This document shows, piece by piece, positions 17,301-63,550 of a stretch of 64,000 bases of DNA. A model generated the notes under the pieces. That model did not search any database, was not told the origin of the DNA, and saw only the letters and a program-made list of their open reading frames with translations. Location: contig NC_043018.1 in assembly GCF_006345805.1 (NCBI RefSeq), positions 24,304,001 to 24,368,000 on the forward strand, written 5' to 3'. Numbering within the stretch: position 1 is the stretch's first letter; each line of letters starts with the position of its first letter. Source of the DNA: Octopus sinensis (Eukaryota). The position numbers and the translations under genes are program-made.

Positions 17301-19541
17301 CAACATTTCGGTTGATATACCCTCCAGCCTTCTTCAGGAAATTTCGAACCTGGGTTCTCATTCCCAAGGTATTTTTTGATATTATTATTATTGACGAGGT
17401 GGTGAAGCACGACCTTCGAACTTTAGGTCTCACCGAGGAAATGACTAGAGACCGAGACCTATGGAAGTATGCTGTGCGTGAGAAGACCCAGCATGACAAG
17501 TGAGACCATAACCCATGGCCTCTACCTGGGATGTAGCCAGTCCACTTATGCATACCTTTCCTTCTTGGGACACAAAACTCTACTTGTGAAGACCTGTTGA
17601 GGCAAGTGAGAATCAGAATCGAAATTGATCAACATCAATGGAAATTACAGCTGTGATACCAGTGCCGGTGGCACGTAAGCGAATCATCCGAACGTGGCTG
17701 TTGCCAGCGCCGCCCCGACGAGCCTCTGTGCCGTGGCACGTAAAAAGCACCATCCGATTGTGACCGTTGCAAGCCTTGCCTGGCCCCCATGCCGGTGGCA
17801 TGTAAAAAGCACCATCCGACCGTGGCTGTTTGCCAGCCCCGTCTGGCACCTGTGCCGGTGACACGTAAAAAGCACCCACTACACTCATGGAGTGGTTGGC
17901 GTTAGGAAGGGCATCCAGCCATAGAAACATTGCCAGATCAGACTGGGCCTGGTGCAGCCTTATGGTTTCCCAGACCCCAGTTGAACTGTCCAACCCATGC
18001 TAGCATGGAAAGCGGATGCTAAATGATGATGATGATGATGATGATGATGATCTTATTATTGGTCAGGTCACTGCTTGGAATCGAACTTGGAATCTTGGGG
18101 TTAGTAGCCAGTGCTCTTAACCATGACTAAATCCAAGAGTCTGAGTTTGATTCCAGGCAGTGACCTGAATAATAATAATAATGATAATAATAACAACATA
18201 AAAAAATTCCTTAGGAATGAGAACCCAGGTCGAAATTTTCCCAAGACACCTGATGAAGGCTGGTGAGTATATCAGCTGAAACATTGTGTTAACAACAAAC
18301 AAGATGAGGACAAATGTAAATAATATACGTAATTCCTCATTTCTTAAATATAGAACCACATTATTCAGTCTTTAGAGTCTTCAAATTAGCTAATCATTTT
18401 GCTGTTCTTAGTATGAAGTTTTATTTGGTCTTTTTTCCAAGAGTTTACTAGGTTCATAAATATCAATATATGTTTAACATAAGTTCTTGTGCAGTTTTTT
18501 AAAAACTTGATCAAATGTCACCATGCAATTTGATATTTGGCAGAAAGCATCAATTTATGAAAAAAAAAAAAAAAATTAAAGGTATCCCTTACTGTGTGAA
18601 AATCCTAGTTGAAGTTGATTATGTTTGTGTAATGCTGGTTTGATTAGAAATTCTTGTCTTTATCATATAAAAAACCCCAAAAAACTGTAAAATACTGTCT
18701 GTAGGCAATCATTTTGAGTTCTATCTGATATCTAAAATAATGGAGCTTTTCCCATTGTTTCCATAATGTCACTACATAGCTCTGTTTTGAACTTACTGGA
18801 AATCCTGCAGCTATACTGGTTCTGGTTTTTTTGGTTTTGTTTCTTTTAGTTGTTCCAACATTTGCCTTGTTTATATTAGACTGTTTCAGCTTCTGTGAAG
18901 CACATTCCACTTGGAAGTTGATATTTTAATTTTCGATTTTTCTAGAGTATTCAAACTTCTTGTTTGTTTTTGGCTTGATATATGAAACGCTATTATTTTA
19001 ATCTCAAAAATGCTTAACAAAAATACAAAAAGAAAAGAAAGAAATAATGTATAACTGTGTTACTTTAGCATGTGGTGTATCTCTTTGTCTTAGAAGTAAA
19101 ATGAAAGTAAAATAATAAAAAAAATGAAAAGCAAATGCAGTGGTGTGCCTAATTGCCTAATTGCCTAATTGCTATATGTAAAGTTAAAAAAAAAGACGAA
19201 AAAAAACAACCAGAATAATCTGTTTTAAAGTGAAATCATGCAAATTGAATTATGTGTAAATGATGGGTAACAGTACATATTCTCCTCTGTGTGTGTGTGT
19301 GTCTCTCTCTAATGAATTAAAAGCAGCATGCCTGACTTTGATTGGAGGTGAGTTGTCTCACCTGTCTAGGACTTTCAGGTGTTTTAACATCCAGCGTTAT
19401 GTGGGAGTTGAGCCAAAGTGCTATGCCACAGCAAACTGGGAAACCAAAAAAAGGCACATACATTATGTGCAATCGATAATATTTACTATCTGTTTTTATT
19501 TATCTATCTATCACTCTATCTATTTCTCAATCCATAATCAC

Positions 19542-27858: not shown

Positions 27859-29305
27859 CTTAGACAGTGTCACATGATAGTTAGCTGGTGCTGGCTGCTG
27901 GAGCCTACTGGCGAGTATTTGAAGGGAAATTTGGCAGGATGGTTATTTGCCCACTGACATTCGTTGACACTGCATCAAAGAAACCAAAGGCCAAAGTGTC
28001 AAGATTGTTGTCTTATCCATATAACTCCTTGAAATCTGTGTTGCCTATTGACACCATCGATCTTCGGGACTTCGGAAAGTATTAGGCTGAGGAAAAATTT
28101 CGTGTACCGTGTTAAAATAATGCTTTTTTATATATTTTTGTGGTGTGTGTGTTCATTCAGTTCATGTCACGTTCAATGGTGACTCACTGTTGAAAAATAC
28201 CCGTGAATTGTTCATTGAAAACGTACTTTGTTTCAACAAGAAAATGCAAAGCCCCATACCGCCAGAAAGACCAGCAACAAGACTGAAGAATTGGATGGTG
28301 TGGAAGTTCTTCCGCATCCAACCTATAGTCCAGACATTGCTCCATCTGACCACGGTCTCTTCCAATTAATGCAGCACTTTATGAAAGGTCGCCGATTTGA
28401 GTCATTCAATGAACATCAATGGAAATTGTAGCTGTGATACCAGTGCTGGTGGCACATAAGAGAATCATCCGAACGTGGCCGTTGCCAGCGCCGCCCTGAC
28501 TGGCTTCCATGCTGGTGGCACGTAAAAAGCACCATCTGATCGTGGCCGTTGCCAGCCTCACCTGGCCTCCGTGCCGGTGGCACATAAAAAGCACCATCCG
28601 ATCGTGGCCGTTTGCCAGCCTCGTCTGGCACCTGTGTTGGTGGCATGTAAAAAGCACCCACTACACTCATGGAGTGGTTGGCGTTAGGAAGGGCATCCAG
28701 CCGTAGAAACTTTGCCAGGTCAGACTGGGCCTGGTGCAGCCTCCTGGCTTCCCAGACACCAGTTGCACCGTCCAACCCATGCCAGCATGGAAAGCGGACG
28801 CTAAACGATGATGATGACGATGATGATGAATGAAGTTGAAGAAACCTGTCAAGAATTTTTCGATTCAAAATCAAAGGATTCGTACTTTCACCAAATCCGA
28901 AAGCTTTCAGATCCTTGGCAGAAGGTTGTGGAAAATGTTGGTCTTTATTTTGAAGAAAAGTTGTTGTTTTTGAATAAATTCTTGCATAAAAAAAAACCCA
29001 TTATTTTAACATGGCGCATAAAAAATTTTCCTCAACCTAGTATTAGCTTAGATTGTTACATTTACACTTCTGCCATTAAAAACAAAAGAAAGAATGAAAG
29101 AAGTCAACGCTTAATTTTGATGTTAGAAATTTGAAGCACAGTGCTGGGAATGATAGTTAACTGTAGTCCAGCGCTCTGCAGTCTTGGCCATCTTCATATT
29201 TATATTGGCAACACATTTTCATTCTACAGAAATAATATTTTATCAGATTTTTTTATCTTCCGGGCTATGTTTTGATTATCTTTGTCTGTTTCTCCATCTG
29301 CACAC

Positions 29306-37239: not shown

Positions 37240-40200
37240 TAATAATAATAAAATAATAATAATAATAATAATAATAATTAATAATAAGATACACACACAC
37301 ACACTCTCTCTCTCCTTCTCTATCTAAATTTAATTGATTTCTGATGTGTTTAGTATTAAGAGGATTAACTTCACATTGAAAAAGATAACACCCTACAATG
37401 GCTATGATACCTATCCCACCCTTACAGACACTCACACTCCCCAACCTCTTTGTTTAATTCCATTTTTTATCTTTTTCTCTTGTTTATTTCCAGGGATTAT
37501 TTAAACCAAGTTACTGTTTCTTTTTCCTAAATGTGGGACACGTACTTATATTGGAGGTATTCGCTTACCTTACCCTGAAGTACTTGGGTACAGGATGGCT
37601 ACCCTATTTCCTCTCTGTCCTGTTTTATTCCATTGTGCAAGTAAGTACTGGAGATATTAATTTGTTGCTTTTGTTGTTGTTATTGCTGCTGCTGCTGTGT
37701 TTGTTGTTGATGTCGTGTCAAAATCAGTGTTTTCCCCAGGCAATAGAATTTCAATTTGCAGCAGGGAGCTGTACCTCTCATGGTACCTATTTATGTAAGA
37801 GTAAAAGGTACCATATTTGCTAAAAAGGATCTGACTGTACCTTCTTACTCCTGTCCACAGCATGTACCACTTCTCCATTCTGCCTTGGTTCTTTTTTTTT
37901 TTTTTGTTATATTCATTTCTCCATGCTAGCAGAGGAATATTGCTATTTAATATTATTCATGAATATATTAATGCTAAATATTAAATACTAGCACTATGAC
38001 CTGGCAACGCCGGGTCGTAGTGCATGCATATACAGCTGCGTACATGTGCACATACACGCGAGTACTGTCAAATGTGCGACCAATCACATACAGTTAGCTG
38101 GCATTCAACTGGTGTATCAAGTTTCGGGCATTTTGATTGGGTTTTGAATAGAAAATTCACAAAAAAGTCACTTCTATTGACTTTTTAATGGCTTTGCAGG
38201 CTGACTGGGGAAATGTAAAGATGTGCACGACCACCCTTGGACGGTTTTGAATGACCATAGAAAGTGCGAGCCCTCTAACTGAAAAATTGTGGATTTGTAT
38301 AAAGGACACGCACACAGACATTTTGTCGTTTATATATATAGAGATTATTAAATACTAGCAGAATTGCCCGGCGTTGCTCGGGGCTGAATTGCTTGAAAGT
38401 ACTGTTAATGATTGCACTGAATTATGATGATTATTCAGGCAAATATTGATATAAGCTTACGGTGGGAGATAAGGACTTAACGATCAAACGTGTGCCATTG
38501 CATTGTTTTGGGGGAACCAAATTTCTGATGAGCATTATAGGGGCACCAACTTTAAGTTTGAGAAAGTGTGGTGGTAGTCTGGGGTGCTCAAAGGAATTGA
38601 GTACCTCTATTGGATAGTTGATGACGTCCTCTGGGTCAGGAGTTGTATCGATAGACTAATATACATAGACTTCCCCAGGAATGAGTTTTAGCATTTCATC
38701 ATTAATATGGTGAACAGTTTTATTCCTCGGGGCCAGTATAGCCTTTTTGCCAATCCAATCCATATTCTGATAATTAGCTTGTAGATCTGGGAACACTGCA
38801 TCTCTGAGATCAGAAGGCGTCTTAACAATGGTACAAATGGAATCGATGGCAATATTACCATTTTCATCCCCTGGTATTTTGCCTTCGCCAAATGCAAGGA
38901 GGGTGTGAGGAAATGCTGCTGATGTGATATTATGTCGCATATGAGCACGCATATTGGTGTGAAGTTTGAGAGTTACTTCCGTTTATTTTTAAAAATATGC
39001 ATTAAAATGGAAAAAAATGATGGTAAATTATTTGTAAAATCATAGACTCATCGTAGACGCGCGCTAATACCCAGAAGGGCTCGATATGAATCACGACTAT
39101 AAGATACCCGGTTTTGGTTAAATTGCAAAATGTGGGAGTAGTTAGGAATCTAAATCGGAGTAGACAGACACACAACCTTTCTTTTATATATAAATATTTT
39201 CGTCCTAAAAAACTTTGTATGGATTGAATGGTTACCTCTATGGAAATATATACACGCACATTATACATACATGTGTGTATAGATGAATATATAAATACAT
39301 TTAAATATCTATATACACTTTTGGGCGATCTTTCTGTTTCTTAGAGATAACTTAAGATCTTATTTTTGTGCTAAAAAACTTTGTATGGAGTGAATGGTTA
39401 CCTCTATGGAAATATATACACACACGTTATACATACATGTGTGCATAGATGAATATATAAATACATTTATATATCTTTATACACTTTTGGGCGATCTTTC
39501 TGCTACTTAGAGATAACTTTAGATCTTATTTTCGTCCTAAAAAACTTTGTGCGGAGTGAATGGTTACGTGTATGGAAATATATACACACACATTATACAT
39601 ACATCTGTGTATAGATGAATATATAAATACATTTAAATATCTATATACACTTTTGGGCGATCTTTCTGCTACTTGGATATAGGGGTGATGTTTCGCTTGT
39701 CGTAGCACACGTTTCCGTCGATTTCCGTAAAAAATGTAAACACTGAATCGGCCATACATACATACATACATACACACACACACTCACATACATGCATACA
39801 TACATATACACATAAATCGAGTAAAAAATTTCAGTTATCTCTCTCTTTCACACATTACTCTCTCTGTCTCTTCACACACACTAACAGAAGCACTTCACTT
39901 ACACAACATACTGTCTGTCTCCCACACTCCATCAAACACACACACACACACACATGTACATCAATGCGTCCCATGCACGGTAACTTCAAAAGAACTTCCC
40001 TCGTCATACAATCGCTTTCTCTTAGTCTCTTTTGCTCTCATTACTTATGTAAAAAAATAAAAGTTTTTTACGGAAATCGACGGAAACCTGTGCTACAACA
40101 AGCGAAACATCGCCGATATAGGTCTTATATTCGTCCTAAAATACTTTCCTGTCACACACTCACGCACATGCACGCACACACACACACACACACCCTCACA

Positions 40201-43200
40201 CACACACACACTCACACACACGCACGTTAGCTTACAATTTTATTTATATATTTGCGTGTCTATGTGTGTAAAGAGGAAGTGGCAGACTGAAAGAGTCACT
40301 CACTACAAAAGGTGAATTACAGTCATTTTATTCGTTGCACACTGTGTGTGTGCGTGTGGTGTAAAACACATTAAGAAAAGCATTTGACATACACACCAGA
40401 ATGTGAGTTTTCTGTAAATTTTGCTTAATTGGAGTTTAAATTTTAAAAAGTGGACCTGGCAAAACCCGATGCATTCTACTCTTAAAAATGCTAAGTAAAT
40501 TGTAATTGAAGAAATCCTATATTGTAGATTTCTATAACTGACAAAGGGAGGCAGATAAAATCTGCCTTTTATAATAAGAGATTCACAAGATTGTGGTTTT
40601 GATTTCCAAACATTTGGTGTGGTGTGTTCCTGATCAAAACTCTTCATTTCACATTGCTCCAGTCCACTTATCTGCAAACAGGTCACCCTGTGATGGACTG
40701 ACATTCTGTTCTGAGGGATTGTTGGCCTGAAAGCTTGATAAGTAGGGTGGCATTGTTCAAAAGCTACATTAATGTGAGCAATCGCATTGTGACCAGTGGT
40801 GTATAACATAATCTGATAATCTGTTTGATGTAGTGAAACGGTGATATTCACAAATTGATTATTGATCATTGATAGCAATTTTTTGTGGTGTATATAGTTT
40901 TGTTGAACTGTAGCAATGTGATAAGAAGTTTTCTTCCCTACCATATAGTTCCAGGTTCAGTTCCACAACATGGCACTTTGGGCAAGTGTCTTTTGTATAC
41001 TTCAGGGTTGACTAAAGCCTTGTGAATGGGTTTGGTAGATGGAAACTAAAAGAAGCCTCCGTGTGTATGTGTGTTCCTGTCTTGACATTGCATTGTAGCT
41101 GTAAATGAATGTCACTGTCATACAAGCAGTGTCATTCATTTCCAATATCATGCAGAAGCATGTCTGGCCATGGGGAAAATATTACCTTGCTTGGAAGTGT
41201 TTCAGGGTTAGCAACAGGAAGGGCATCCAGCTGTAGAAAATCTGCTTCTATATACACTCTCTGACCCATGCAAACATGGAATAGAGGACATTAAAATAAT
41301 GTGAATTTTCAGAAAGCACCTGTTGTCATGGAATTGTTTCTGTTTTCAGCTCCTTCCGTCTCCTTTCTGGTTATCTCTACTTCCAGATCTTTGCATTTGT
41401 CTTTATTTGTTTCAATCATAGGACCGTGGCTATGCTGGGGCACCAACTTGAAGGGTTTTAGTTGAACAAATTGACCCCAGTACATACATTTTCAAGTCTG
41501 TTACTTATTTTATTGGTCTCTTTTGCTGAACTGCCAGGTTACTTGGATGTAAACCAACTAACAACAGCAGTGAGGGACAAACACTAAGTTACACACACAA
41601 ACACACACAACAGGCTTCCTCACAGTTTCCTTCTACCAAATTCACTCACAAGGTATTTGTTGGTTCTGAGTCTGTAGCAGAAGGCTCTTGCCCAAAGTGC
41701 TATGTAGTGGGACTGAACCTGAAAGGATATGGTTACAAAGCAAGCTTCTTAACTGCACAGCCATGCCTGCTCCTACATAACCAGAGATACATTGTAATCT
41801 ATTAGTTTAATCAGGAAATCCTTTGTTTTCCACAACAATATCTGGTAAATTTAGTTTTGATTTTTCTGTTTGTGTAGATGTGTGCATCACGTTTTGTTTG
41901 TAGCCCTTTATTAATCATTTATACCCTTGCTGGTATATATTTGCACAAGGCTGTGAGCTGGCAGAATTGTTAGCTGAGCGGTATTTTGTCTGCCGCTACG
42001 TTCTGAGTTCAAATTCCGCTGAGGTCGACTTTGCCTTTCATCCTTTCAGGGTCGATTAAATAAGTACCAGTTACGCACTGGGGTCGATATAATCGACTTA
42101 ATCCGTTGGTCTGTCCTTGTTTGTCCTCTCTGTGTTTAGCCCCTTGTGGGTAGTAAAGAAACTGGTATGTATTTGCACCATATCTTTTCTGTTGCTATTT
42201 CATAACACAGGCTGAAAGCCTCCAAATCATGTTTGTAGTTTCATTTCTTGTTAGCTAAGACTGGACTGCCAGCGATCATCATCATCATACATGTTCCATC
42301 CTGGTAGAGGTTTGACAGGATCTGGTGGGCCCAAGGGCTGCAATGGTCTGTTCTGGCAAGGATTCTATGAATGAATACCCTTTCTAACTCCAGTCATGTC
42401 ACAGCATGTAATGGGTGCTTCTTTTTTTTTTTTTTTTTTGTTAAGCCATCAGCAGTAATGAGGTCATCATGCAGTTTGCAAGAGGAGCAGCTTTATGCTA
42501 GGAGATGGAGGGCAAAAGGTGGGGGGGGAAGTATGACAGAAGGGGCCAATCCTGAACAAGATTCTTGCTATAGAGGAGCCATATGACTACTCATATTCTA
42601 TTGGAGAAGATGGAAGCGACGGTGGAGTTGGAGATGGATAGGGGTGGAGTGAAGTTGGAGATGACTGACAGTGTTAAACAGCAGAATAGTAGCAATGAAA
42701 GAGTAGACAGGAGAAGGACAAGAGAAGGATAATGTTGGATAAGGAAGAGAGGGGTAGGTGTGGTGTAAGAGGAGAGACAATACGCTTAATTGCTCCTTCC
42801 CAAACTCAGACTTCTTTTGTCAGAATGAGACAATCGGGCACAGGTGTTTGGACACTGATGATTTGGCGCAACTGACTGGATGTCCAGGTCTGTTTCTGGC
42901 AACAGCACTTTTTTGTATTGCAGGAAACAAACACACGCATATACATGCACATAGAAAAATAAATACATACGGATAGGAAGAGAAAGAGAAAAAGACAGAG
43001 AGACAGACTTCAGTTTATGAATGCTTTGTCTCTCTGCCTACATATAAAGAAGAAATATGCTTACACAGATAAGCAGAGAGAGTGGTGGTGGTGGGGGGAG
43101 GGAATGAGAAACATGAAAACATCTAATGTCAAATAAGTCAGCATCGAACCATTGATGCCAAATAGGAGGTGCCCAAACACATCACACTCATATTTTCTTG

Positions 43201-46200
43201 TTACTTGATCTATTCTTTCTCATTACATGCTTTTGCTAGTTTCTGACGTGGAGGCTTTGATCTAGAGCCACAACCACGATTCCTTCGACCTCAACTTTGA
43301 CTCCTGCACTTCTCAGTTGGTGTCTATTACCACCCTGTTCATCGTTTTCTTCTGGTATTGGCCATCTATCCCTCATGCCAACCCCATCCAACCCCGTTTT
43401 TATTTAATGACACTATATCATCATCATCATCATCATTTTGCATCCTTTGTTCATGCTGGTATGGGTTGGACAGGTTGACCAGGGCTGCTAAACTGAAGGG
43501 TTGCACCAGACTCCAGCTTGATTTGGTGTGGTTTCTACGGCTGGATGCCCTTCTTTATGCCAACCGTTTTGAGAGTGTAATGGGTGCTTTTTACTTACCA
43601 GTTGCGTCACACCAGTGTCTGCCATGATTACAATTTCACTTGGCTCTATGGGTCTTCTATTATATCTTTATTTTTAACTTATTTATGCTTTCTGTTTGTG
43701 TTTTCCTTTTTTGTTTTCCTCATCACAACTGAACTGTCTGTTATGACAGTCTCACTATTTTGTAATTGTTGGTTTCCTTGGAGACAGAAAACAATTTTTT
43801 TTGTTTTGTTCAGGTTTCGTGGTTAAGCTATTTTATATAAATTTTCCATTATTCTTTACTAAATAATTTTGTTGTCATGCAGTGGATATTTTATAACATA
43901 TTATATGTTTAACTTCCTGCATTTGTAGTAAATACAATCACTTCTGAATCAACAATTTATTTGGTTATTGTTATCTTTATTATTTGAGCAGGATAACGCA
44001 TAGTTAGCCTATAAACAGATGTTCATTCAAATATTGGTTGCTATGACAGTAATGCTACTTAATACATTTAAATGTTGACCAAATATATTAACACACACAA
44101 GTATGTAGCAACATTATCTTTGTTAGAAATAACTGGCTTTGCTAAGTTAGTGATATATATTAAAATATAACCAGATGCGGATCTTTTCGGTTTGAATGGC
44201 AGTTTTTCCTAGCAGTGTCATATGAAATTGTCACCCATAATTATGACCCTAGTATCGATCTATTGCATTTCAATCTGTTTTAGGGTTAGGGTTAGTTAGA
44301 GTTAGGGATGGGGGGAAGGGTATCTTTTTTTCTTCAGAATGTAAATAAACTCAATCTGTTTCTTAAACGAGGGACATATTCATACGGCACAGAATGTTTT
44401 CACCTCAATAGACATCATTGATTGGTTGAAATTGCAGAAATTGAAGAAAAAAAACAACAAATAGCTTACAAACTATAGAATTTTCTCAATAAAGCCAAGA
44501 GAAAAAGATGTTTTATAAACACATTCTACCAGTATACGAAGTTTAAAATTGTTTAGTTACGTGGAAATTATTTTAAAAAACTACCGTTCAAACCGAAAAG
44601 ATCCCCAGATGCATAGGCACATAGAAGTATATATAGCAGTATTGTCATCATCATCATCATTAGTTTAATGACCACTTTTCCATACTTGCATGGGTCAGAT
44701 GGAACCTTATTCAGGCAGATTTTTTATGGCTGGATCTCCTCCCTGTTGCCAACCCTCTTCTATTTCCTAGTAAGGTAATATTTCCCGACAATCAAACATG
44801 TTTTCACCAGAATTTGGAAATGAAGGGCACAGCATGTACAAATACAATAAACACATGCGTCATATGCTTGTCTGTTTACATTGTGAGAGGGCCTGGCGCA
44901 GCCTTCTGGCCTCCCAGACCCCAGTTGAACTGTCCATGCTAGCATGGGTTGGACGGTTCAACTGGGGTCTGAGAGGCCAGAAGGCTGCGCCAGGCCCAGT
45001 CTGATCTGGCAGTGTTTCTACAGATCAGACTGGGCCTGGCGCAGCCTTCTGGCCTCCCAGACTCCAGTTGAACCATCATGCTAGCATGGGTTGGACAGTT
45101 CAACTGGAGTCTGGGAGGCCAGAAGGCTGCGCTAGGCCCAGTCTGATCTGTAGAAACACTGCCAGATCAGACTGGGCCTGGCGCAGCCTTCTGGCCTCCC
45201 AGACCCCAGTTGAACCGTCCAACCCATGCTAGCATGGAAAATGGACATTAAACGATGATGATGATGATGATGTTTCATGGACAGCACCATCAGCAAACAC
45301 TACTGTATGAATTCGTACAGAGGTATGACTTTGGTAAGCCCCAAAAAGATTTAGTTAATCGCTAGATCAGTGGTTGCTGAACTTTTTTGCTATGGAATCC
45401 TTGAACATTATTCTTAAATATGTGGAACGCCAATAACCTTCAGGGAACCCTGGGCTTTTGCAGAACACACTTTGGGAATCCCTACTTTACACTAACAATT
45501 CTACACCATATTAAGGACATCTACTGCTAACTGCACCTGACATGCTTGCAACTATTTTCTTTTTTCATTTCTGTGGGGGTAAATTTTAGTATTTAAATCA
45601 TTAAGTTGCATTTAATTAATTAGAAACAAAAATGCACCACTAATATGCTGTACCATAATACACATGTGATGAGTGTGACTTTAACCATAAATAGGAAAAT
45701 TATTTATTTATTTATGTGCCCTTTTCAAGCCTAGCCAGGTTCATGGTCCCGGTTTCCCGGTTTCTATGGCGTATGTGTTCCCCCCAGCTGGACGGGACAC
45801 CAGTCCATCACAGAATTACCCAAGAAACAGGAAGAAAGAGTGAGAGAAAGTTGGGGTGAAAGAGTACAACAGGGGTCGCCACCACCCCATGCCGGAGCCT
45901 CGTGGAGCTTCAGGTGCTTTCGCTCAATAAATACACAACGCCTGGTCTGGGAATTGAAACTGTGATCCTCCGACTGCGAGTCCACTGCCCTAACCACTGG
46001 GCCATTGCGCCTCCAACTATGAAAATAGTGTAAAGTTATTGAAGAGTTATGATGTGAAACACGCCATGCAGGTATCAGCTGTATGCACCGTATTACGGTA
46101 GGCAGTTGCATGCTGGTACTGGGTAGATATGTTACCAGTGGTAACAGAACATAATTATGAGATATAAATTGGTTTCACTCAGCTGGTTTGTTATGTTAGA

Positions 46201-46554
46201 GGGGTACACATAAAAGAGAAAGTGTAAATATTTATAAGGGGCTATACATGGTCTGGTTTATGGGTTTTGCTATTGACCAGGACGTGTGTTTTGATGCATG
46301 GAATTGGTTATATTACTGGAATTCATTGTGTTTTTGCTTTTATTCACTTAAAGATCAGTTGGGTTTCTGCTGCTGATACAATACTTTGGATTCTAGCTTG
46401 AATTTCAGCCTCTCAAAAGTAGTATCCATGCAATAGTTGACCCCATAAATTTGACCTTAAAAAATGGTCTAAAAAATTCAATTTTTACACAAGTATATAC
46501 GGCATGTATGAATGTGCTTATGTATGTGTATGTATGTGTATATGCATGTATGTG

Positions 46555-46607
<53 letters not shown>

Positions 46608-49600
46608 TGGTATTTGAACTTAGAACATAATGTTATCTGACATTATGTTCTGAGTTCAAATACCACCAAGGTCGGCTTTGCCTTTCATCTTTTTGGGGTT
46701 GAGAAATTAAGTACCTGTGAAACATTAGGGGGTCAATGTAATCGACTAGTCCCCTCCTTGCAAATTTCAAGCCTTGTACCTTTAGTAGGAAGTATTGTTA
46801 TTATTATTATTATCATCTAAGGCAGTGAGTTAGTAGAATCGTTAGCTCTCCAGGTAAAATACTTTGTGACACATTTTGCCCGTCTTTGCGGTCTGAGTTC
46901 AAAATCCACTGCGGTCATCCTTTCAGGGTTGATAAGTTAATTACTAGTTGAGAATTGGGGTCAATATAATTGAAAGTTTTGAAAACATTATTATTTGGAC
47001 CCTTTCCCCTAAAATGGCTGGCTTTGTGCCAAAATTTGGAACCATTATTGTCATTATTGTTATCATTGTTATTTCCAGGCCCAGACAGGTTGGATACAGC
47101 ATGACTTTGGACATCTTTCTGTCTTTAAAAGAAGCAAATTTGACCATTTTTGGCACTATTTCACCATGGGATTCATAAAGGTCACTATTTTACTCATTTT
47201 TATTTATTCATGCACATGTTTTTTCCTTTGTTTTTTTTTTTACTTCTTTATCTTAATTTCCTTTTTCCCTCCTTTCCATTTTCTTTTCCTTTTTCTTTTC
47301 CCCTTTCCTATATTTAATTTTCTTTCTTTTCCTCCTCTATCCCTCTCCATTCTTTCAATAAACTATATATATATTAGCGACTGAGGCAGGATCAATACTA
47401 AGAGGTAATTTTTAACCCTAATCAAACTATGCTGTGGTGGATATCGTGAGAGAAACCTTCATGTTGGCTTTTGGTGCCAAGTGCATTCTTGTTTATATCA
47501 CTAGTAGGGAAGATATATCTTTGTCACCTCCAGCACTGAGACCACCAAATCACTTGATTTCGACCTTCCTTGGTCTCGTCAGTGATAGATGCTTGACTAT
47601 TAGAGATAGCAGCAACTTATCTTCCCTGTCGGTGATATATAGAATAACAGTGCCCGAACAGGCTGGCACTGGTGTCATGATTAGCCAGTGAGTTTGTTGA
47701 AATATATTTATTAGCAACAGAGGCAGTAATAATACCAAGAGATAATAATTATCCCCACTCAAACATGTGTGTTCTGTTAGAACAAACTATACTGCCATAG
47801 ATACCACAAGAGAGACTCTCATATTGGCTTTTGGTGCAAAATGCCCTCTTGTTTATATTGCAATGGGGAGATAAATCCCTGCTACCTCCAGCACCAAGAC
47901 TACCAGATCACGTGATTTCGACTTCTTTGGCTTTGTCAATGATGGACACTTGACTGCTAGAGATAGCAGCGATTCATCTCCCTGCCAGTGATATACAAAA
48001 TAACAGTATCAGAACAGGCGCTAGTGTTGCAATTAGCCAGTGAGCTTGTTAAAAAATATTTATTAATGACAGAGGCAATAATAATACCAAGAGGTAATAT
48101 TTATCTGTATATAACCGTGGATGTTCTGTTAAACTATAATCTACAGTGACTTTTCTCTATTCCAGGGAGCTTCACCTGCCTGGTGGAGCCACATGCATTA
48201 CCAACACCATGCAAAACCGAATGTGGTATGTACCTTACTTTTTATTTGTCTTTTTCTCTCTCTCTCTCTCTCTCCTCCTCTCCTCCTCCTCCTCCTGCCA
48301 CTTTCTTTAAAATAAAATATTTTTACCAGGTAAACAATGACAGTTGCTCCAAACTTTTGACTTGGTAACCATTATTAGGTTATAAAGAAAAACAGATTTT
48401 TTTTCCAACCATACTCTTTTACTTGTTTCAGTCATTTGACTGCGGCCATGCTGGAGCACCGCCTTTAGTCGAGCAAATCGACCCTGGGACTTATTCTTTG
48501 TAAACCCAGTATTTATTCTATCGGTCTCTTTTGCTGAACTGCTAAGTGACGGGGATGTAAACACGCCAGCATCGGTTGTCAAGCAATGCTAGGGGGACGA
48601 ACATAGACACACAAACACACACACATACATATACATATATATGACAGGCTTCTTTCAGTTTCCGTCTACCAAATCCACTCACAAGGTATTGGTCGGCCCG
48701 GGGCTATAGCAGAAGACACTTGCCCAAGATGCCACGCAATGGGACTGAACCCGGAACCATGTGGTTGGTTAGCAAGCTACTTACCACACAGTCACTCCTA
48801 CGGCATACCATATTTTCTGGCATACATGTCAGTGTGGCATTTAGTGCAAACATTCAAGCATTACCACCATCTTTCCAAATCCTGCTGGGTTTCACATGGA
48901 GTTTTTGGCCCTTCAATGCCTTCTTGGTGTATAAGTCATCCTACCTTTTTTAGCTGTAAATTCTTGTCTGAAAAATATGACTTGTACACTGGAAAATGTG
49001 GAATGTATATTTTTTGGTTCGTTTTGTTCCAATTGGAACACCTCTGCCACTAATGAATGCATCAAATAAACCTGAGTAAGCTATGAATACTGTGACATCT
49101 TCTGATTTTAATAAGACTTTATTTTTTTTTAATATCTTTTACTTGTTTCAGTCGGTGGGCTGTGGCCATACCGGAGCACTGCCTTGAAGGATTTTAGTTG
49201 AACAAATCTGTTCCAGCACTTATTTTGAAGTCTAGTACTTATTCTATCAGTCCCTTTTGCTAAACTGCTAAGTTATGGGGCCCTTAACCAAGCCCATATT
49301 AGTTGTTAAGTGGTGGTGGTGCACACACACCAATTACAGGCTTCTGCAACGTTTCTGTCTACCAAATTCCCTCACAAGGCATTGGTCTGCTGGGGGTTAT
49401 AGTAGTAGATGCTTGCCCTAGGTTCCATGGAGTGGGACTGAACCAGAAACCATATGATTGTTAAACGATCTCCTTAATCATACAGCCAATGCCTGCACCT
49501 ATTTTTAAATATTTTTTTTTTAAGAAAAGAAAAAAAAAACATAGCACATGCGCCAAAAAAACCCCAAAAAACCCCCTCAGTCCAACAATTGTTGTTCAAA

Positions 49601-52072: not shown

Positions 52073-55000
52073 TATATGTATGTATGTATACATGACAAGC
52101 TTCTTTCCATCTTCCAAATGCACCCACAAGGCATCAGTCAGCCCTGGGCTATAGTACAAGACACTTGTGCAATATGCCACACAGTGGGATTGAACCTGAA
52201 AGCATGCTGTTGGGGAGCAAATTTCTTACCACACTGCCTCTCCTGGCCAAGTCATTTGATGTTGCTCATCATTAACAATGCCTTCTTGGTATTCTGGCAG
52301 AAAATGAAATCTCTTCAAAGCATATCCTTTTTATTTGTTTTTTTTTTGTTTTTTTTTTTTGTTTTAAATCCATGAGGCAAATCTGTAGTTTAAGGAAGTC
52401 CATGGCAGGGTGGGAGGAAATGGTGGGGATTAATAGACGTTATTATTAAGAAATTTGGCATCATGCCATTGTTAATGAAAGTTATGATTTCCTGAGAATT
52501 GGCACAAAATGTAATTTCTTTTCCATGAGCTTAGGGAGGAGCCATTACGAGATCACTCAGCCTACTAGAAATAGATGTAAATCTCCTCCAAAATACAGTA
52601 TACCATCTTAAATAAGAAAAGGACACATTAGATTCCACCAAAAACTCACGGTTGTAGGATCGCGATTCCGATTCCCAGACCGGGCGTTGTGAGTGTTTAT
52701 TGAGCGAAAGCACCTAAAGCTCCACTCGGCTCCGGCAGGGGGTAATGGCAATCCCTGCTGTACTCTTTCGCCACAACTTTCTCTCACTCTTTCTTCTGTT
52801 GGCCTGCTCGCTTAGCCAGCGGGGTGGCGTCACTTGAAGGCTAAAACAATGCGAAGCGCATTGTGACCAGTGATGTGTATCAACATCTGATAGCCTGGTC
52901 AGTCACAATGATATATATATATATGTAAACAGAGTTAGCGGTTATAGTAACCGACTAAGGGATAAAATATCCGTTACCTGTATTAACCCCGGGCAATGGT
53001 ATGCAGGCACACCATACACATAAGAGTGCAGATAACAACAGGCTAAACAAGAGTTTATCAGGAACCAATGCAAATAATTAGAAAATGGAGAAAAACCACA
53101 GATTAACCAACACATCGATTGGACCATGTTTATAGCTTGTTTTTTAATACAAAGCATGAGATAACAAAATAGGTGACGTAACATATCTTATGGCCATTAC
53201 TTATCAGATTGTCGAAATGCAGTCTATACATGAATGCGAGAATAAAATCCTTCATCTTCATAGGGCATTCGAATTAAAGCAACGGATCTTCATCAGAGTG
53301 AAAAACAAGAGCATACAATATCGTATTGTATTGGCTTTTGAGAACAATCCATATCGATTGCGCTGTGGAAGTAGAAAGGCAGAGAAGCACAAGGAAGCTG
53401 GGTGCATCTATTTACATGCGGTGCAAAACACAAAAGTGTAAAAGAATACAAAATAAATGAAAAGAGTTTTTATCTGCCTTTCGACATATATGTGTATGTG
53501 TTTGTATGTGTGTATGTTAATGTGTGTAGAATTGAGGTAAAAATGTTATCTGTTAGATCTTATTTATTTCTTTATTGCCCACAGGGGGCTAAACATAGAG
53601 GGGACAAACAAGGACAGACAAAGGGATTAAGTCAATTACATCAACCCCTGTGCGTAACTGGTACTTATTTAATCGACCCCGAAAGGATGAAAGGCAAAGT
53701 CGACCTCGGCGGAATTTGAACTTAGAACGTAGGGGCAGACGAAGCACTGCTAAGTATTTCGCCTGGCATGCTAACGTTTCTGCCAGCTCGCCACCTGTTA
53801 GATCTGTTAGATCTTATTTCAAATATATTTCATTGTTTCCATTTGATTAAACGTGTTGTTGTTGTTGTTATAATTTCAGTTGGGCCGCCACTCCTGTTTC
53901 CTGTGTATTTCCAGTATGCACTTCTACACTACGCTATTTCAAGGAGAGCTTGGGCCGTATGTATTATTATTGCCTCTCTCTTTCTCTCTTTATCTCCCTT
54001 CTCTTTTTTTTCTTCCTTCCCTTTTTCTCTCGTGTATGCATAACAGAAATATGTTGAGCTATGAATTATAAAGGTCTCTTTAGCAGAAGATTTAGAAGTT
54101 TGTCACATGTCTGGAAGCCATTCAGCGACGTGCAACCAAAAGAATACCCTCCATCAGGCATATGCCATATTCTGAACGCCTTACTTCCCTGGGCATGGAC
54201 ACATTGAAACTCCGACATCTGGCAGCTGACTTGGCAGACACCCATAAAATTATTAACCATCTTACAAACAATAACTCTAAGCACCTTTTCAAACTCCATC
54301 CATCTAACACCCATGGACATATTTACAAAGTCAGAAAACAGCACAGCTGCCATGACTTTAGGAAACATTTTTTCACGCTGAGAGTTGCTGAAGCATGGAA
54401 CAAACTGCTGGCATCAGTTGGTAGTTGTCGGAGCACTGCATCCTTCAAAACTTCCATGCTTTCTGAGATTCTCCAACACTACACCTGATTTTCTCCCCTC
54501 CATACACACACAAGCATGTATCTGACTCATACATTGTTCACTTTCCAGACATTTGTACATTACTGCATATACTTTATACGCACTTTCTGACAAGTTATGG
54601 TGCACCTGAGCACTGTATACAATAATTTCATTATTATTATTATTATGTAACTGCTATAGAAGTCTACTGGTAAGCAGAGATAATCGTTACGCACACACAT
54701 ACTAGCGATTGGCAGATTGGCAGGTATTTGTCTTGCAAGTTACTTGGTGACCTTACTGGTGCAGGTAGCACATGAAAAGCACACAGTACACTCTGTAGAG
54801 TGGTTGGCATTAGGAAGTGTGCCTGGCTGTTGAAACCAAGCCAAAGCAGACAACGGACCTTGGTGTAGCCCTGTGGCTTACCACCTCCTGTCCAACTGTC
54901 CAATTCATGCCAGCATGGAAAATGGACATTAAATGATAATGATGATGATTAAGGTTTATGTCCTTTTCTGAAAGCAATGACTAACTGAGCCCACAAAGGT

Positions 55001-58000
55001 GCCAGTACATAGTCACTTGACTGGCTATAAATAGCAGCCAAATCTCCCTTGAGTAACACAGCCCACTACTTAACATAAATAAGAAGGATACATTAGATTA
55101 TGTAATCCTACTTACATTATATCATCGTCATCATCATCATTGAAAATGTGTTTTCCATGCTGGCATTGGTTGGATGGTTTGACCAGAGCTGGTAAGGCCA
55201 GGGGTTGCACCAGGCTCCATTGTCTGTTCAGGCATGGTTTCTATGACTAGATGCCTTTTTTTAATGCCAACCACTCCACAGAATGTACTGGATGCTTTTG
55301 TTGTGGTGGATCGGTTTTCTTGAGTGCAGCCAGGTACCAGATGTCTCGGTCCTTAATATCTGAAAACAAATAGGGTGGTCACTTCTGGAGTACAGTGAAG
55401 TTGCTTGTGGGTAGTGGAAAATTCAAAGATCAGGACAGAATCCTTCTCTGGGAAAAATTGACCAGAGAAAAATTCAACTTTTCTCTGAAGAAGGACAACT
55501 GTTTGAAATGTTGGATTTTCCATTCCCCTCAGCAACTTCACGGTACTCTTTTTATCAATTTTACTGAATAATACAAGCCTTGGTGATGCAGACCAGCACC
55601 AGTCTCTGAGTCCGTTTGATCATACATGTGTGTGTGTGTGTTCTTTATAAACACATGATGTTTTAATGCAAGACGTTTTCTTAGAGATTGTAATATTCCT
55701 TTCTTTCTTTTAAAGGACCTTGCTTGGATGGCAGCCTTTTTTATAAAGATTTTCTACCTTTATACTCCCTTTCTTGGATTCTGGGGAGTGTTGGCATACT
55801 ATTTTGTCGTCAGGTAAGCCTGCTTCTACTATTTCACTTGTACAAGTCTTGCTTGTCTGGTAAAATGTTGAATACTTTTCACTTAACATTGAATTCAATT
55901 TACATCAAGGACATGTTTTTAACTTAAACCCAGCCCTCCCATACACACACAAGTACACACAAAAGTCCAAACTACAGTTAAAAGGATGCTTTGGAAAGGT
56001 GTTGTTTTTGTTGGGAATGTGGTAGAACTGAATCTGAAGTTCCAGTCTTAAGCAATACAACTGTTTTAATCAAAGGTAGTACAATAACCAAAGAGGAATT
56101 ATTGAAGACATGGTTATTGATAGCATAATGATGATAATGATGGAGGTGGTGGTGGTGGTGGTGACAAAGTATCAGCACCTAGCCATTGCGTTACAGAGGC
56201 TAAGGAAAGTGCTGGTAAAATGTATCCCTGCATGTATCCTGTCTACCCTTATCGGACAGGTCGTCATGATGGATATATTGGGCTTCGTATATTTGTACCC
56301 CAGTGTCACTTTGATGGCATGTGCTCCTCTCTCACATAATGATAATAATGTAAGAGAGCATCATCATCATCATCATCATAATAATAATAATAATAATAAT
56401 AATTAATAATAATAATGATAATAATAATAATTATTATTATTTGTTATGTAGACACAAGTCTTAAGATTCCAGGGGAAGGGGCTCAATCATCAGTCGGTGG
56501 TTCACAGTTTTGAGTTCTACTTTTCATCCTTTTGATCACTGAGTACATAATGTGGCTCATTAGACCTTTGTTCTGGTGCCTTTTTCCTGAGTGACCATCC
56601 CCACCCCCTTGTATGCTAATCTGTCACAAGGGTACCTATTCAGAGCTGAGTGGACTGGAGTGATGTGAAATTATGTGTTTTGCTCAAGAACACATTGTAC
56701 AGCTGGTCTGGAGATTGAAACCATGATGTCTTGATCATGAGTGCAACACTCTAACCACTAGGCCATGTGCCTTGACTGGTTCTTCTTTTCATTGACCCTG
56801 AAAGGATTGAAAGGCATATTTGACCTTGGTAGAATTTGAACTCAAAACGTAAGATGGAACAAGTGCTACTAAGCATTTTATCCAGCCAGTCAACAATTCT
56901 GTTAGCTTCCCACCAATGCCTGTCTCCATGACAACAACACTAATAATGCAGATATTGTTGTCTGACCAAGGAAAGGCACCTAATTTTGCTATCTCTGGTT
57001 GGCCTGCCTGACAAAAACAAAAGAACAGGTTCTGCTCCTTGTACTTCACAGCAATTGAATTTTTAGCTGAACTGGAAGGTAAGGGACTTGGGCATATTTC
57101 ACTGAGCCATAAATTAGTTGTTACAACAATGCAACCATGAAGGTTTTAACAATAAGAAAGGAAAGAATTTTTAAAATCATGAATGTTGATGATGATAATG
57201 ATGAGGATAATAATGATGGCATGTCCTCTTCCTTTTATCTCCCCCACCACTTCTTCCTTTTCTTTTCTGTCTGTCCCAATCTGTTCTGTCTGTCCCTATC
57301 AGGTGTCGTTTTATAAAAGAGTTTTTCGTATCTCTCTTTATTTCTATATTTCTAACTAAATATTTTGATATTAAATCTCAGAACGAGTTATAAGTTGAAG
57401 ACTGGAAGGATGGCTTCCCTTTGCAAATACTGATAGGGCACAGAAAGTGTGTCTATAGCCAGCTGGAGGAGGTGTCCTCCTGGGGCTACAAACTACAGTA
57501 GCATCCACCCTTAGGGGTTAGCCAATTTTAAATGGCAAATATACGTCACAATATTTTGATTGATTTTTTTTTTTCCTGAAGTAAATCTTTTTTTGAAGTT
57601 TGTCTTCAAGATGTATCGACTAGTAATATTTTTTTCTCTTCTGTCTTCAGGTGTGTTGAAAGTCACTGGTTTACCTGGGTCAGTCAGTCTAACCATATTC
57701 CAATGGATGTAGAACATGATACAGCCCAACCCTGGCTTGCCTTGCAACTCCATGCGACCTGTGATATTGAGAAGTCATTTTTCAATGATTGGTTTACCGG
57801 ACATCTTAATTTCCAAATCGAACACCAGTAATTATTATAATTTATCACTATCAGTAATTATTGATTGCAGATTCATTAGCACACTGGACAAAATGCATGG
57901 TGTTGAGCTAGCAGAATTTATAGCCTGCTGGGCAAAACGCTCAGTGGTATTTTGTCTGTCTGTATAATCTTACTCTATGCTCTGACTTGTTTCAGTCATT

Positions 58001-62937: not shown

Positions 62938-62959
62938 AAAATATCCATATTCATAAATA

Positions 62960-62973
62960 TATATATGTATACA

Positions 62974-63028
<55 letters not shown>

Positions 63029-63209
63029 TTATATGCATGCATATTTGTATGTGTATATATATATATATATATATACATACATTCATATATATATACATAC
63101 ATTCATATATATATATACATATATATCTATACATATATAAAGGGAGAACATAAAACAGCAAAAGTGAACAAGACATTGAAAAAAGACGAAGAAACAATGT
63201 AAAGGAAAG

Positions 63210-63240
<31 letters not shown>

Positions 63241-63311
63241 TATATATATATATATGCATAATATATATATATGCATACATATATATATATTATATACATA
63301 TATATATATGC

Positions 63312-63347
<36 letters not shown>

Positions 63348-63550
63348 GCATATATATATATACATATATATATATATGCATATATATATACATATATATA
63401 TATATGCATATATATATACATATATATATATATATGCATATATATATATATATATGCATATATATATACATATATATATATATGCAATATATATATACAT
63501 ATATACATATACATATATATATATATATGCACACACAAACATATATATGT
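62960..63550. repeat. (TA)n-based compound repeat with recurring tgca/taca interruptions, just 3' of the stop codon
   Basis: Read directly. Confidence 0.95.

What the first reader, a model, noticed from the sequence alone, without database searches (positions are those of the whole stretch)
44890..45270. Five-arm alternating fold-back palindrome built from a LINE 3' UTR
Seen: one ~55-85 bp segment occurs as forward-reverse-forward-reverse-forward. Two turns pivot on the element's own perfect 12-bp palindrome CATGCTAGCATG (44935-44946, 45077-45088). The other two pivot on a short interrupted inverted repeat with a 12-nt loop (45009-45020 and its reverse complement at 45151-45162). The arms differ by only a few bases. 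Established: turns at short interrupted palindromes are typical of replication template-switch or ODIRA-type inverted amplification. Inference: a recent fold-back event that puts near-perfect dsRNA hairpins and a cruciform-prone site in FADS intron 3. It is a likely ADAR editing or endo-siRNA substrate in an animal group known for extensive A-to-I editing.
Basis: partly seen in the sequence, partly recalled or inferred. Interest (0 to 1): 0.7.

Follow-up and report, generated by a model that had tools for sequence, protein, structure and literature searches.

The report
Five-arm fold-back of a SINE tail
A short mobile element (SINE) in intron 3 of a fatty-acid desaturase gene carries its own last ~75 bases five times in alternating orientation, most likely because the DNA strand being made at insertion folded back and copied itself three times; it is a tidy mutational scar that should form a long RNA hairpin, not a new kind of system.

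Summary
Window 44889-45238 reads forward-reverse-forward-reverse-forward. Two turns sit on CATGCTAGCATG, and two on a 12-nt loop that appears in opposite orientations. The two halves form a 141-nt inverted repeat, 99% complementary, around 45077-45088.

The repeated unit is the 3' part of an abundant SINE. Only its last ~45 nt is a conserved LINE-type tail. The site lies in intron 3 of a 12-exon, 445-aa FADS-like gene.

Only the rightmost arm runs on into the native tail and (ATG)n. The SINE 5' part is missing. A simulation started from the 122-nt native piece and applied three self-primed fold-backs of a strand growing leftward, with 1-3 nt microhomologies. It reproduced all 384 observed bases with no indel and 7 transitions.

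This matches the "snap-back" 5' junctions described for non-LTR retrotransposition, repeated three times. Later DNA-repair fold-back is the main rival. ODIRA, twin priming and simple tandem duplication each fail a defining feature.

Long dsRNA and cruciform potential are computed (-344 and -208 kcal/mol). Editing and siRNA production are untested. An assembly artefact could not be excluded, because no reads or orthologous loci were reachable. Interest is modest.

The parts
44889..44934 (+). Arm F1, sense. It is truncated on the left at GGGCC, where it abuts non-SINE flank, and on the right at GTCCA. It is the last-made arm in the model.
   Evidence: It carries one CpG transition at 44931.
44935..44946 (.). 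Pivot P1, the element's 12-bp palindrome CATGCTAGCATG. The junction uses TGG/CCA microhomology and skips CAACC on the F1 side.
44947..45008 (-). Arm R1, antisense. Together with P1 and loop 1 (44933-45020) it is the reverse complement of loop 2 + F3 (45151-45238).
   Evidence: (I1, 99%). One private G>A at 44972.
45009..45020 (-). Loop 1, GCAGTGTTTCTA. This is native SINE sequence TAGAAACACTGC in reverse complement.
45021..45076 (+). Arm F2, sense, running from CAGATC to GAACCAT.
   Evidence: It shares the derived T at 45063 with R2 (45108). CpG transition at 45075.
45077..45088 (.). Pivot P2, palindrome CATGCTAGCATG, the centre of the 141-nt-arm palindrome. Its junction is 1 nt shorter than P1's, so the two are independent junctions.
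45089..45150 (-). Arm R2, antisense. It is the first snap-back product in the model.
   Evidence: Substitutions at 45097 (CpG), 45108 (shared with F2) and 45133.
45151..45162 (+). Loop 2, TAGAAACACTGC, in native orientation and contiguous with F3. CTG/CAG microhomology flanks the 12-nt loop.
45163..45272 (+). Arm F3 with native palindrome P3 (45225-45236), the LINE-type tail AAAATGGACATTAAAC and a perfect (GAT)6 microsatellite. With loop 2 it is the only piece colinear with intact SINE copies, and it serves as the 122-nt seed.
37641..47078 (+). Intron 3 of the FADS-like front-end desaturase gene. The gene has 12 exons, all with AG/GT boundaries, and encodes 445 aa. The block lies ~1.8 kb upstream of exon 4, in sense orientation.
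44643..44838 (-). An older, diverged, oppositely oriented SINE of a related subfamily, 50 bp upstream. It is a separate insertion and not part of the fold-back.
   Evidence: (I6-I8)

Best explanation
This is a 5'-truncated SINE insertion whose minus strand snapped back and primed on itself three times, in a rolling-hairpin-like way. The minus strand grows leftward from the (ATG)n tail. That is the direction of first-strand cDNA synthesis in target-primed reverse transcription.

Step 1: about 125 nt into the SINE RNA, the 3' end (..CAG) paired with CTG 12 nt upstream and copied the new strand back to the palindrome. This made R2.

Step 2: at CATGCTAGCATG it flipped again with 1-nt microhomology and copied the whole hairpin. 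This made F2, the flipped loop and R1, and hence the 99% mirror symmetry.

Step 3: at the next copy of the palindrome it flipped a third time, with TGG/CCA microhomology. It copied 46 nt (F1) and was joined to the upstream target DNA.

What is shown: the anatomy, the polarity and the exact reconstruction. What is inferred: that the fold-backs happened during or right after retrotransposition, and that the polymerase was the LINE reverse transcriptase rather than a host repair polymerase.

No function is indicated. It is a passenger in an intron whose transcript should contain a ~140-bp near-perfect dsRNA stem. That is a plausible ADAR or Dicer substrate, and a cruciform-prone DNA site.
For: 1. 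Only loop 2 + F3 + tail (45151-45272) is colinear with intact SINE copies. The SINE 5' ~285 bp is absent, and F1 abuts unrelated sequence.
2. Every other arm is a subset of sequence lying to its right. F1 lacks the loop and the CAGATCAGACTG bases that R1 has. Self-templating therefore works only right-to-left.
3. Simulation from the 122-nt seed with three snap-backs gives 384 nt against 384 nt observed, with 0 indels and 7 substitutions.
4. The model predicts the observed loop inversion and the 99% mirror symmetry, against 95-96% direct identity. It also predicts the 1-nt difference between the two palindrome junctions, and a derived T shared only by F2 and R2.
5. Arm lengths follow the 1, 1, 2, truncated doubling expected of rolling-hairpin copying.
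6. Precedent exists. Snap-back 5' junctions, in which the cDNA 3' end primes synthesis complementary to the cDNA before 5' junction formation, are a recorded category of R2-protein insertions (PMC11371274; PMC11331408). L1 insertions carry inverted duplications from self-annealed 3' ends with 2-bp microhomology (bioRxiv 10.1101/2024.12.14.628481).
7. The (GAT)n tail is perfect and the arms differ by ~1.5%, so insertion and fold-back are both young.
8. All seven differences are transitions, three of them at one CpG, in a CpG-depleted window (observed/expected 0.41). That looks like real mutation rather than read error.
Against: - No target-site duplication brackets the block (alignment score equals the shuffle mean), so a single insertion event is not proven. 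Intact copies show only ~5-nt matches that merge with the tail, so this test is weak in either direction.
- In a one-episode model, the T shared by F2 and R2 needs a polymerase error or later arm-to-arm gene conversion. A staged history explains it without either.
- Nothing identifies the polymerase.
- No reads, no second individual and no orthologous locus could be examined.
- Documented snap-backs are single events. I found no report of three in series, after a limited literature search.
Confidence: 0.55

Rival explanations
1. Post-insertion DNA repair or replication template switching. An ordinary SINE copy suffered a break or fork collapse inside the element. The resected 3' end folded back at microhomologies, as in foldback priming or MMBIR with a host polymerase such as Pol delta. 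It switched template three times and was end-joined to the left side, with loss of the SINE 5' part.
For: The strand polarity and microhomology junctions are the same as in the favoured model. Yeast double-strand breaks give templated inverted duplications by foldback at microhomology (PMC11724301). A staged history explains the F2/R2-only variant without a copying error. No TSD was found.
Against: It needs the break, or the 5' end of a truncated SINE, to coincide with the first fold-back point. It also needs loss of exactly the SINE 5' part. Documented break foldbacks are mostly 5-34 bp, whereas here 262 nt were added. All added sequence comes from the element's own 3' end next to the TPRT priming site.
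Confidence: 0.25
2. Assembly or library artefact. The true locus would have one arm or one hairpin. An assembler walking a palindromic graph, or chimeric fold-back reads, would have produced extra arms.
For: No independent data could be obtained.
Against: The arms carry private substitutions. All are transitions and three are at one CpG, which is not the indel-rich pattern of read error. The inner and outer arm pairs have distinct variants in a nested pattern. The two palindrome junctions differ by 1 nt. There are no Ns or gaps in the window. No adapter sequence sits at the pivots.
Confidence: 0.1
3. ODIRA-type inverted amplification or plain tandem duplication of a 142-bp forward-reverse unit.
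For: Short interrupted inverted repeats sit at the turns. TRF reports period 142, 2.3 copies.
Against: [quoted passage not shown] It requires an origin within the amplified segment and works at kb scale. Its outer copies run on natively on both sides, but here F1 is truncated and lacks upstream SINE sequence. A tandem duplication would keep both loops in the same orientation and both palindrome junctions identical. The loops are reverse complements, and the junctions differ by 1 nt.
Confidence: 0.04
4. One copy of a dispersed fold-back repeat family. The five-arm unit would have arisen once elsewhere and then been copied here.
For: It cannot be excluded from a 64-kb window. The block ends in a functional-looking tail and (ATG)n.
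Against: The junction sequences occur nowhere else in the window, although ~20 copies of the SINE are present. There were 0 matches to the junction in the metagenome collection, but that collection holds almost no related DNA. An RNA with a ~140-bp perfect stem would be a poor template for reverse transcription.
Confidence: 0.06

Closest known systems
cDNA snap-back 5' junctions of non-LTR retrotransposon insertions (R2-protein PRINT insertions; Zhang et al. 2024, PMC11371274; PMC11331408)
   Same: There is a native 3' end with its tail. Upstream of it lies the reverse complement of the insert itself, made when the cDNA 3' end primed on the cDNA before 5' joining. The 5' part of the template is missing.
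   Different: Those were single snap-backs, seen in engineered insertions in human cells. Here there are three in series, two of them at the element's own palindrome, in a natural SINE copy. RT involvement is inferred, not shown.
Inverted duplications from remodelling of L1-induced break ends, and foldback inverted duplications at yeast double-strand breaks (bioRxiv 10.1101/2024.12.14.628481; PMC11724301)
   Same: A 3' single strand self-anneals at 1-3 nt microhomology and primes synthesis, which gives a local inverted duplication.
   Different: Those cases duplicate flanking genomic DNA or add 5-34 bp. Here only element sequence is duplicated, 262 nt in three rounds.
Rolling-hairpin replication (parvovirus-type; established knowledge)
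   Same: The 3' end turns round at terminal palindromes and copies the strand just made. This gives alternating-orientation concatemers, length doubling and flip/flop inversion of the asymmetric turn-around sequence.
   Different: This is an analogy of mechanism only. There is no replication protein, no nicking site and no replicon here. It was a one-off accident.
L1 twin priming (5'-inverted insertions)
   Same: It also gives an inverted segment at the 5' side of a non-LTR insertion, made during TPRT.
   Different: Twin priming inverts a more 5' part of the RNA and does not duplicate the 3' part. Here every arm is a duplicate of the same 3' segment.
ODIRA / DUP-TRP/INV-DUP inverted triplications (PMC11790251)
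   Same: The turns sit at short pre-existing inverted repeats, and copies alternate in orientation.
   Different: Those are kb- to Mb-scale, origin-dependent, with three copies whose outer ones stay native on both sides. None of this holds here.
Intronic inverted-repeat SINE pairs (for example inverted Alus) as ADAR substrates
   Same: Intramolecular dsRNA is made from SINE sequence in a pre-mRNA. It meets the operational criterion of >=50 nt at >=80% reverse-complement identity within 2 kb (PMC9989829).
   Different: Here a single insertion makes the duplex, with 141-nt arms at 99% and a 24-nt spacer. The usual case is two independent diverged copies. Editing was not measured.

Membership tests
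Snap-back 5' junction of a non-LTR (TPRT) insertion | The 3' end of the insert is the native element end with its tail or microsatellite | tested here: met
   45151-45272 is colinear with intact SINE copies through CCATGCTAGCATGGAAA..TTAAAC(GAT)n.
Snap-back 5' junction of a non-LTR (TPRT) insertion | Sequence 5' of the RNA-templated part is the reverse complement of the insert's own cDNA, joined at little or no homology | tested here: met
   R2 is the reverse complement of F3, joined at CTG/CAG. The reconstruction is exact.
Snap-back 5' junction of a non-LTR (TPRT) insertion | The RNA template is abandoned, so the element's 5' part is absent | tested here: met
   There is no SINE core or head upstream of 44889. 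The flank from 44839 to 44888 is unassigned, and 44643-44838 is a different, inverted SINE.
Snap-back 5' junction of a non-LTR (TPRT) insertion | The whole block is bracketed by a target-site duplication, showing a single insertion event | tested here: inconclusive
   The local alignment of the flanks scores 12 against a shuffle mean of 12.1. Intact copies of this SINE show only ~5-nt matches that merge with the tail.
Snap-back 5' junction of a non-LTR (TPRT) insertion | Synthesis by the retroelement reverse transcriptase during insertion | not testable with these tools
   This needs biochemistry or a polymorphic or empty orthologous site.
ODIRA inverted triplication | Junctions at pre-existing short inverted repeats | tested here: met
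   The turns use the native 12-bp palindrome and native CTG..12 nt..CAG.
ODIRA inverted triplication | Three copies, the middle one inverted, with both outer copies running on natively into their flanks | tested here: not met
   There are five arms. The leftmost arm is truncated at GGGCC and is not followed by native upstream SINE sequence.
ODIRA inverted triplication | The amplified segment contains an active replication origin | not testable with these tools
   Origin activity cannot be read from sequence. The arms of 46-76 nt are far below the kb-scale units described.
L1-type twin priming | The inverted segment derives from a more 5' part of the RNA and is not a duplicate of the 3' segment | tested here: not met
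   All arms duplicate the same 3' ~75 nt.
Tandem duplication / minisatellite of a 142-bp unit | Successive units are identical in register and orientation, including the turn-around sequences | tested here: not met
   Loop 1 is the reverse complement of loop 2. The P1 and P2 junctions differ by 1 nt. Mirror identity of 99% exceeds direct identity of 95-96%.
SINE with LINE-derived tail | Many short non-coding copies with common ends and a 3' tail shared with a LINE | tested here: met
   There are 22 palindrome-motif hits against 0.2 expected. The alignment shows a common core and tail, and there are two ~410-bp full copies. The same tail motif ends a 1090-aa APE+RT LINE ORF on metagenome contig L004.
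SINE with LINE-derived tail | A pol III-type head (tRNA, 5S or 7SL derived) | tested here: inconclusive
   ARAGORN finds no tRNA in the window. Rfam finds nothing relevant in a full copy. The head is made of ~70-bp internal repeats.
ADAR / dsRNA substrate | Intramolecular reverse-complement pairing of >=50 nt at >=80% identity within 2 kb | tested here: met
   The pairing is 141 nt at 99% with a 24-nt spacer. The RNA MFE is -344 kcal/mol with z = -28. The criterion is from PMC9989829.
ADAR / dsRNA substrate | A-to-G RNA-DNA differences or small RNAs from the locus | not testable with these tools
   No transcriptome data are available here.
Known miRNA precursor families (Rfam) | Score at or above the family gathering threshold | tested here: not met
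   There are 67 matches, all below gathering; nearly all are to unrelated miRNA families, on both strands. This is a generic perfect-hairpin effect.

The most novel reading that the evidence does not exclude
The palindrome in this LINE/SINE tail may be a recurrent hot spot where the reverse transcriptase, or a repair polymerase acting on the cDNA, turns round. If so, this SINE family would regularly spawn near-perfect hairpins by rolling-hairpin copying at insertion. In a genome that is ~12% SINE, that would be a steady source of new long dsRNA, of ADAR hyper-editing targets and of hairpin-RNA loci. It would be a route to inverted repeats that needs only one insertion instead of two.
Probability: 0.1. 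Interest if true: 0.6.

Novelty: new member of a known kind. Interest (0 to 1): 0.3.

Why it matters
The internal logic of the locus lets the order, direction and microhomology of three successive template switches be read from one sequence. That makes it a clean natural example of snap-back copying at a retroelement insertion, which so far is documented mainly in engineered systems and cancer genomes.

It also shows that a single SINE insertion can create a ~140-bp perfect RNA duplex inside a housekeeping lipid-metabolism gene. This is relevant to where ADAR substrates come from in heavily editing animals, and to palindrome-driven fragility.

It does not indicate a new system or any effect on the desaturase.

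Tried and rejected
1. Orthologous or independent copies of the locus:
- The search for homologous proteins with exon 1 gave nothing above 69% identity, so the source species is not in that collection.
- The look-up of encoding contigs with five window ORFs, three of which cross the junctions, found nothing.

2. DNA scans:
- The fold-back junction had 0 hits in metagenome contigs.
- The tail motif gave 4 unrelated invertebrate-like contigs.
- The arm sequence had 0 hits in genome contigs and viral contigs.

3. TSD search: no signal above shuffles.

4. Using the old inverted SINE as a built-in empty site: its similarity to other copies ends at 44838, 50 bp short of the block. Alignment across the joined flanks was too weak to use.

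5. Naming the SINE family: a full-text search for the core motif found no paper. No tRNA or Rfam head was found.

6. miRNA reading: only sub-threshold generic hairpin matches.

7. Strand bias of the substitutions, as a possible cytidine-deaminase signature on the cDNA: the directions are mixed, so nothing can be concluded.

8. Rightward-growing or F1-first models: rejected, because F1 lacks sequence that R1 has.
Full report
Reading 44600-45600 and running repeat finder gives this layout:
- F1 44889-44934
- CATGCTAGCATG 44935-44946
- R1 44947-45008
- loop GCAGTGTTTCTA 45009-45020
- F2 45021-45076
- CATGCTAGCATG 45077-45088
- R2 45089-45150
- loop TAGAAACACTGC 45151-45162
- F3 45163-45238, then AAAATGGACATTAAAC and a perfect (GAT)6 to 45272

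Adjacent arms are 95-96% complementary. The largest feature is a 141-nt inverted repeat (44933-45073 / 45098-45238), 99% complementary, around the second palindrome. Direct copies are only 95-96% alike. The arm core occurs five times here and once elsewhere; none is expected by chance. The loop junction is unique to this locus. It is the only near-perfect long inverted repeat in the window. As a single strand it folds at -344 kcal/mol as RNA (z = -28) and -208 kcal/mol as DNA (z = -31).

**2. What the repeated segment is.** CCATGCTAGCATGG, allowing up to 2 mismatches, occurs 22 times in 64 kb against 0.2 expected. Aligning the copies shows one family, present in both orientations. It has a conserved core (..GGTTGGCGTTAGGAAGGGCATCCAGCYGTAGAAAC..) and the arm sequence. 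It ends in GAACCGTCCAACCCATGCTAGCATGGAAAGCGGACGTTAAAC(GAT)n.

Two full copies of ~410 bp lie at about 17640-18050 and 28410-28830, with ~70-bp internal repeats in the head. No tRNA or Rfam head was detected. The copies are short, non-coding and numerous, so this is a SINE.

The last ~45 nt is a LINE-type tail. The same motif closes a 1090-aa ORF with endonuclease, reverse-transcriptase and PHD-like domains on an unrelated metagenome contig (L004). For context, SINEs make up 11.6% of the Octopus vulgaris genome (PMC13282606). I could not verify the species of this window.

**3. Gene context.** All exon boundaries are AG/GT. It encodes a 445-aa front-end desaturase on the + strand. Exon 3 ends at 37640 and exon 4 starts at 47079. 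The block is therefore in intron 3, about 1.8 kb upstream of exon 4, in sense orientation. A 445-aa Fad is reported for another cephalopod (PMC4550275).

**4. Anatomy that constrains the mechanism.**
- Only loop 2 + F3 + tail is colinear with intact SINE copies. The ~285-bp SINE 5' part is absent, and F1 abuts unrelated sequence.
- Loop 1 is the reverse complement of loop 2, and R1 + loop 1 mirrors loop 2 + F3. The block is therefore a nested palindrome, not a tandem array.
- The reverse arms carry the full CCAACC-palindrome. The forward arms F1 and F2 lack 5 and 6 nt there, and the two junctions differ by 1 nt. They are independent junctions, not copies of each other.
- F1 lacks the CAGATCAGACTG and loop bases that R1 has. 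F1 therefore cannot have templated R1, and every arm is a subset of what lies to its right.
- A derived T (45063 / 45108) is shared only by the inner pair F2 and R2.

**5. Reconstruction.** I took only the 122-nt native piece (45151-45272) and let its complementary strand grow leftward with three self-primed fold-backs:
- CAG on CTG across the 12-nt loop
- a terminal G on the C of GAACCGTC, after copying up to the palindrome
- TGG on CCA, after copying back through the entire hairpin to the next palindrome, then stopping after 46 nt

The predicted sequence is 384 nt and the observed sequence is 384 nt. There are no indels and seven substitutions, at 44931, 44972, 45063, 45075, 45097, 45108 and 45133. 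All seven are transitions. Two form the mirror pair explained by a single change in R2 made before it was copied. Three fall on the same CpG, in a window with CpG observed/expected of 0.41.

The arm lengths follow the 1, 1, 2, truncated doubling expected when a 3' end repeatedly turns round and copies the strand just made. This is rolling-hairpin-like, including the flip of the asymmetric loop.

**6. Which process.** The direction of growth is that of first-strand cDNA synthesis primed at the SINE tail. The first departure from the RNA template explains the missing 5' part without further assumptions.

Such snap-back 5' junctions are a recorded category of R2-protein insertions. In these, the cDNA 3' end primes synthesis complementary to the cDNA before the 5' junction forms (PMC11371274; PMC11331408). 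L1 insertions show inverted duplications from self-annealed 3' ends with 2-bp microhomology (bioRxiv 10.1101/2024.12.14.628481). I therefore favour fold-back during or right after retrotransposition, with confidence about 0.55.

The main rival, at about 0.25, is later break repair or replication template switching by a host polymerase. Yeast double-strand breaks give foldback inverted duplications, mostly 5-34 bp (PMC11724301). This rival explains the inner-pair variant without a copying error and is not contradicted by the missing TSD. It does, however, need the break to coincide with the first fold-back point and the SINE 5' part to be lost.

ODIRA (definition in PMC11790251), twin priming and simple tandem duplication each fail a defining feature, as set out in the membership table.

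**7. Artefact.** I could not obtain reads, another individual or an orthologue. Several points argue against an artefact:
- the differences are private to arms and are all transitions
- three of them hit one CpG
- inner and outer arm pairs carry variants in a nested pattern
- the two palindrome junctions are not identical
- there is no adapter sequence at the pivots
- there are no gaps in the window

I leave about 0.1 for this.

**8. Age and consequences.** Six mutational events in 384 nt amount to about 1.5%, or about 0.5-0.8% without the CpG site. One paper calibrates a Jukes-Cantor distance of 0.065 to about 18 My (PMC13282606). On that scale the event is of the order of one to a few million years old. 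This is a rough inference.

The transcript meets the operational definition of an intramolecular dsRNA region (PMC9989829). ADAR hyper-editing or Dicer processing is therefore plausible but untested. The many Rfam miRNA matches are all below threshold and reflect only the perfect hairpin. Nothing suggests any effect on the desaturase.

**9. Verdict.** This is a new, unusually complete instance of a known kind of event, snap-back or foldback self-priming at a retroelement insertion or break. Interest is modest.

Noticed in passing
window 44643-44838 (- strand), tail (TCA)n 44645-44660: An older, diverged SINE of a related short subfamily lies inverted 50 bp upstream of the block. Its tail region (44645-44702) is 84% complementary to the new element's tail (45215-45270). 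This adds a weak outer stem around the five-arm block.
   Followed up: partly
window 44280-44307: Five copies of the telomere-type hexamer TTAGGG (79% matches) lie inside intron 3.
   Followed up: no
window 4707-62940 (+ strand): A complete FADS-like front-end desaturase gene: 12 exons, all AG/GT, 445 aa, with HPGG, HDFGH, HYQHH and QIEHH motifs. Every tblastn match to human FADS2 falls in one of the 12 exons, in the same order. Intron 1 is ~30 kb and full of SINE copies.
   Followed up: yes
window 17640-18050 and 28410-28830: Two full-length copies of the SINE share a head made of ~70-bp internal repeats (GGTGGCACGTAAAAAGCACCATCCGA..GCCAGCC). No tRNA, 5S or 7SL similarity was detectable, so the promoter type of this abundant SINE is unclear.
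   Followed up: partly
L004 163-3435 (- strand), metagenome contig Ga0164306_10019889: An apparently intact LINE has a single 1090-aa ORF with endonuclease, RT and PHD-like finger domains. The ORF reads straight through the same CCAACCCATGCTAGCATGGAAAGCGGACG tail motif and stops in the microsatellite. The tail motif is thus conserved across distant hosts and is partly coding. L001-L003 carry the same tail on other short elements.
   Followed up: partly
window 54832-54949 / 55124-55241: Two independent SINE copies in opposite orientation form a 118-nt inverted repeat at 75%, between exons 8 and 9. This is the ordinary two-insertion route to intronic dsRNA and contrasts with the single-insertion hairpin studied here.
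   Followed up: no
window 62941-63520: A long (TA)n / (TATACA)n-type microsatellite starts just after the FADS stop codon, in the likely 3' UTR. It accounts for most of the long low-identity inverted repeats reported by the repeat finder.
   Followed up: partly
window 44600-45400: At E<=1, Rfam reports 67 matches, all below gathering; nearly all are to unrelated miRNA precursor families, on both strands of the arms. This shows how any perfect hairpin mimics a pre-miRNA in covariance-model scans.
   Followed up: yes
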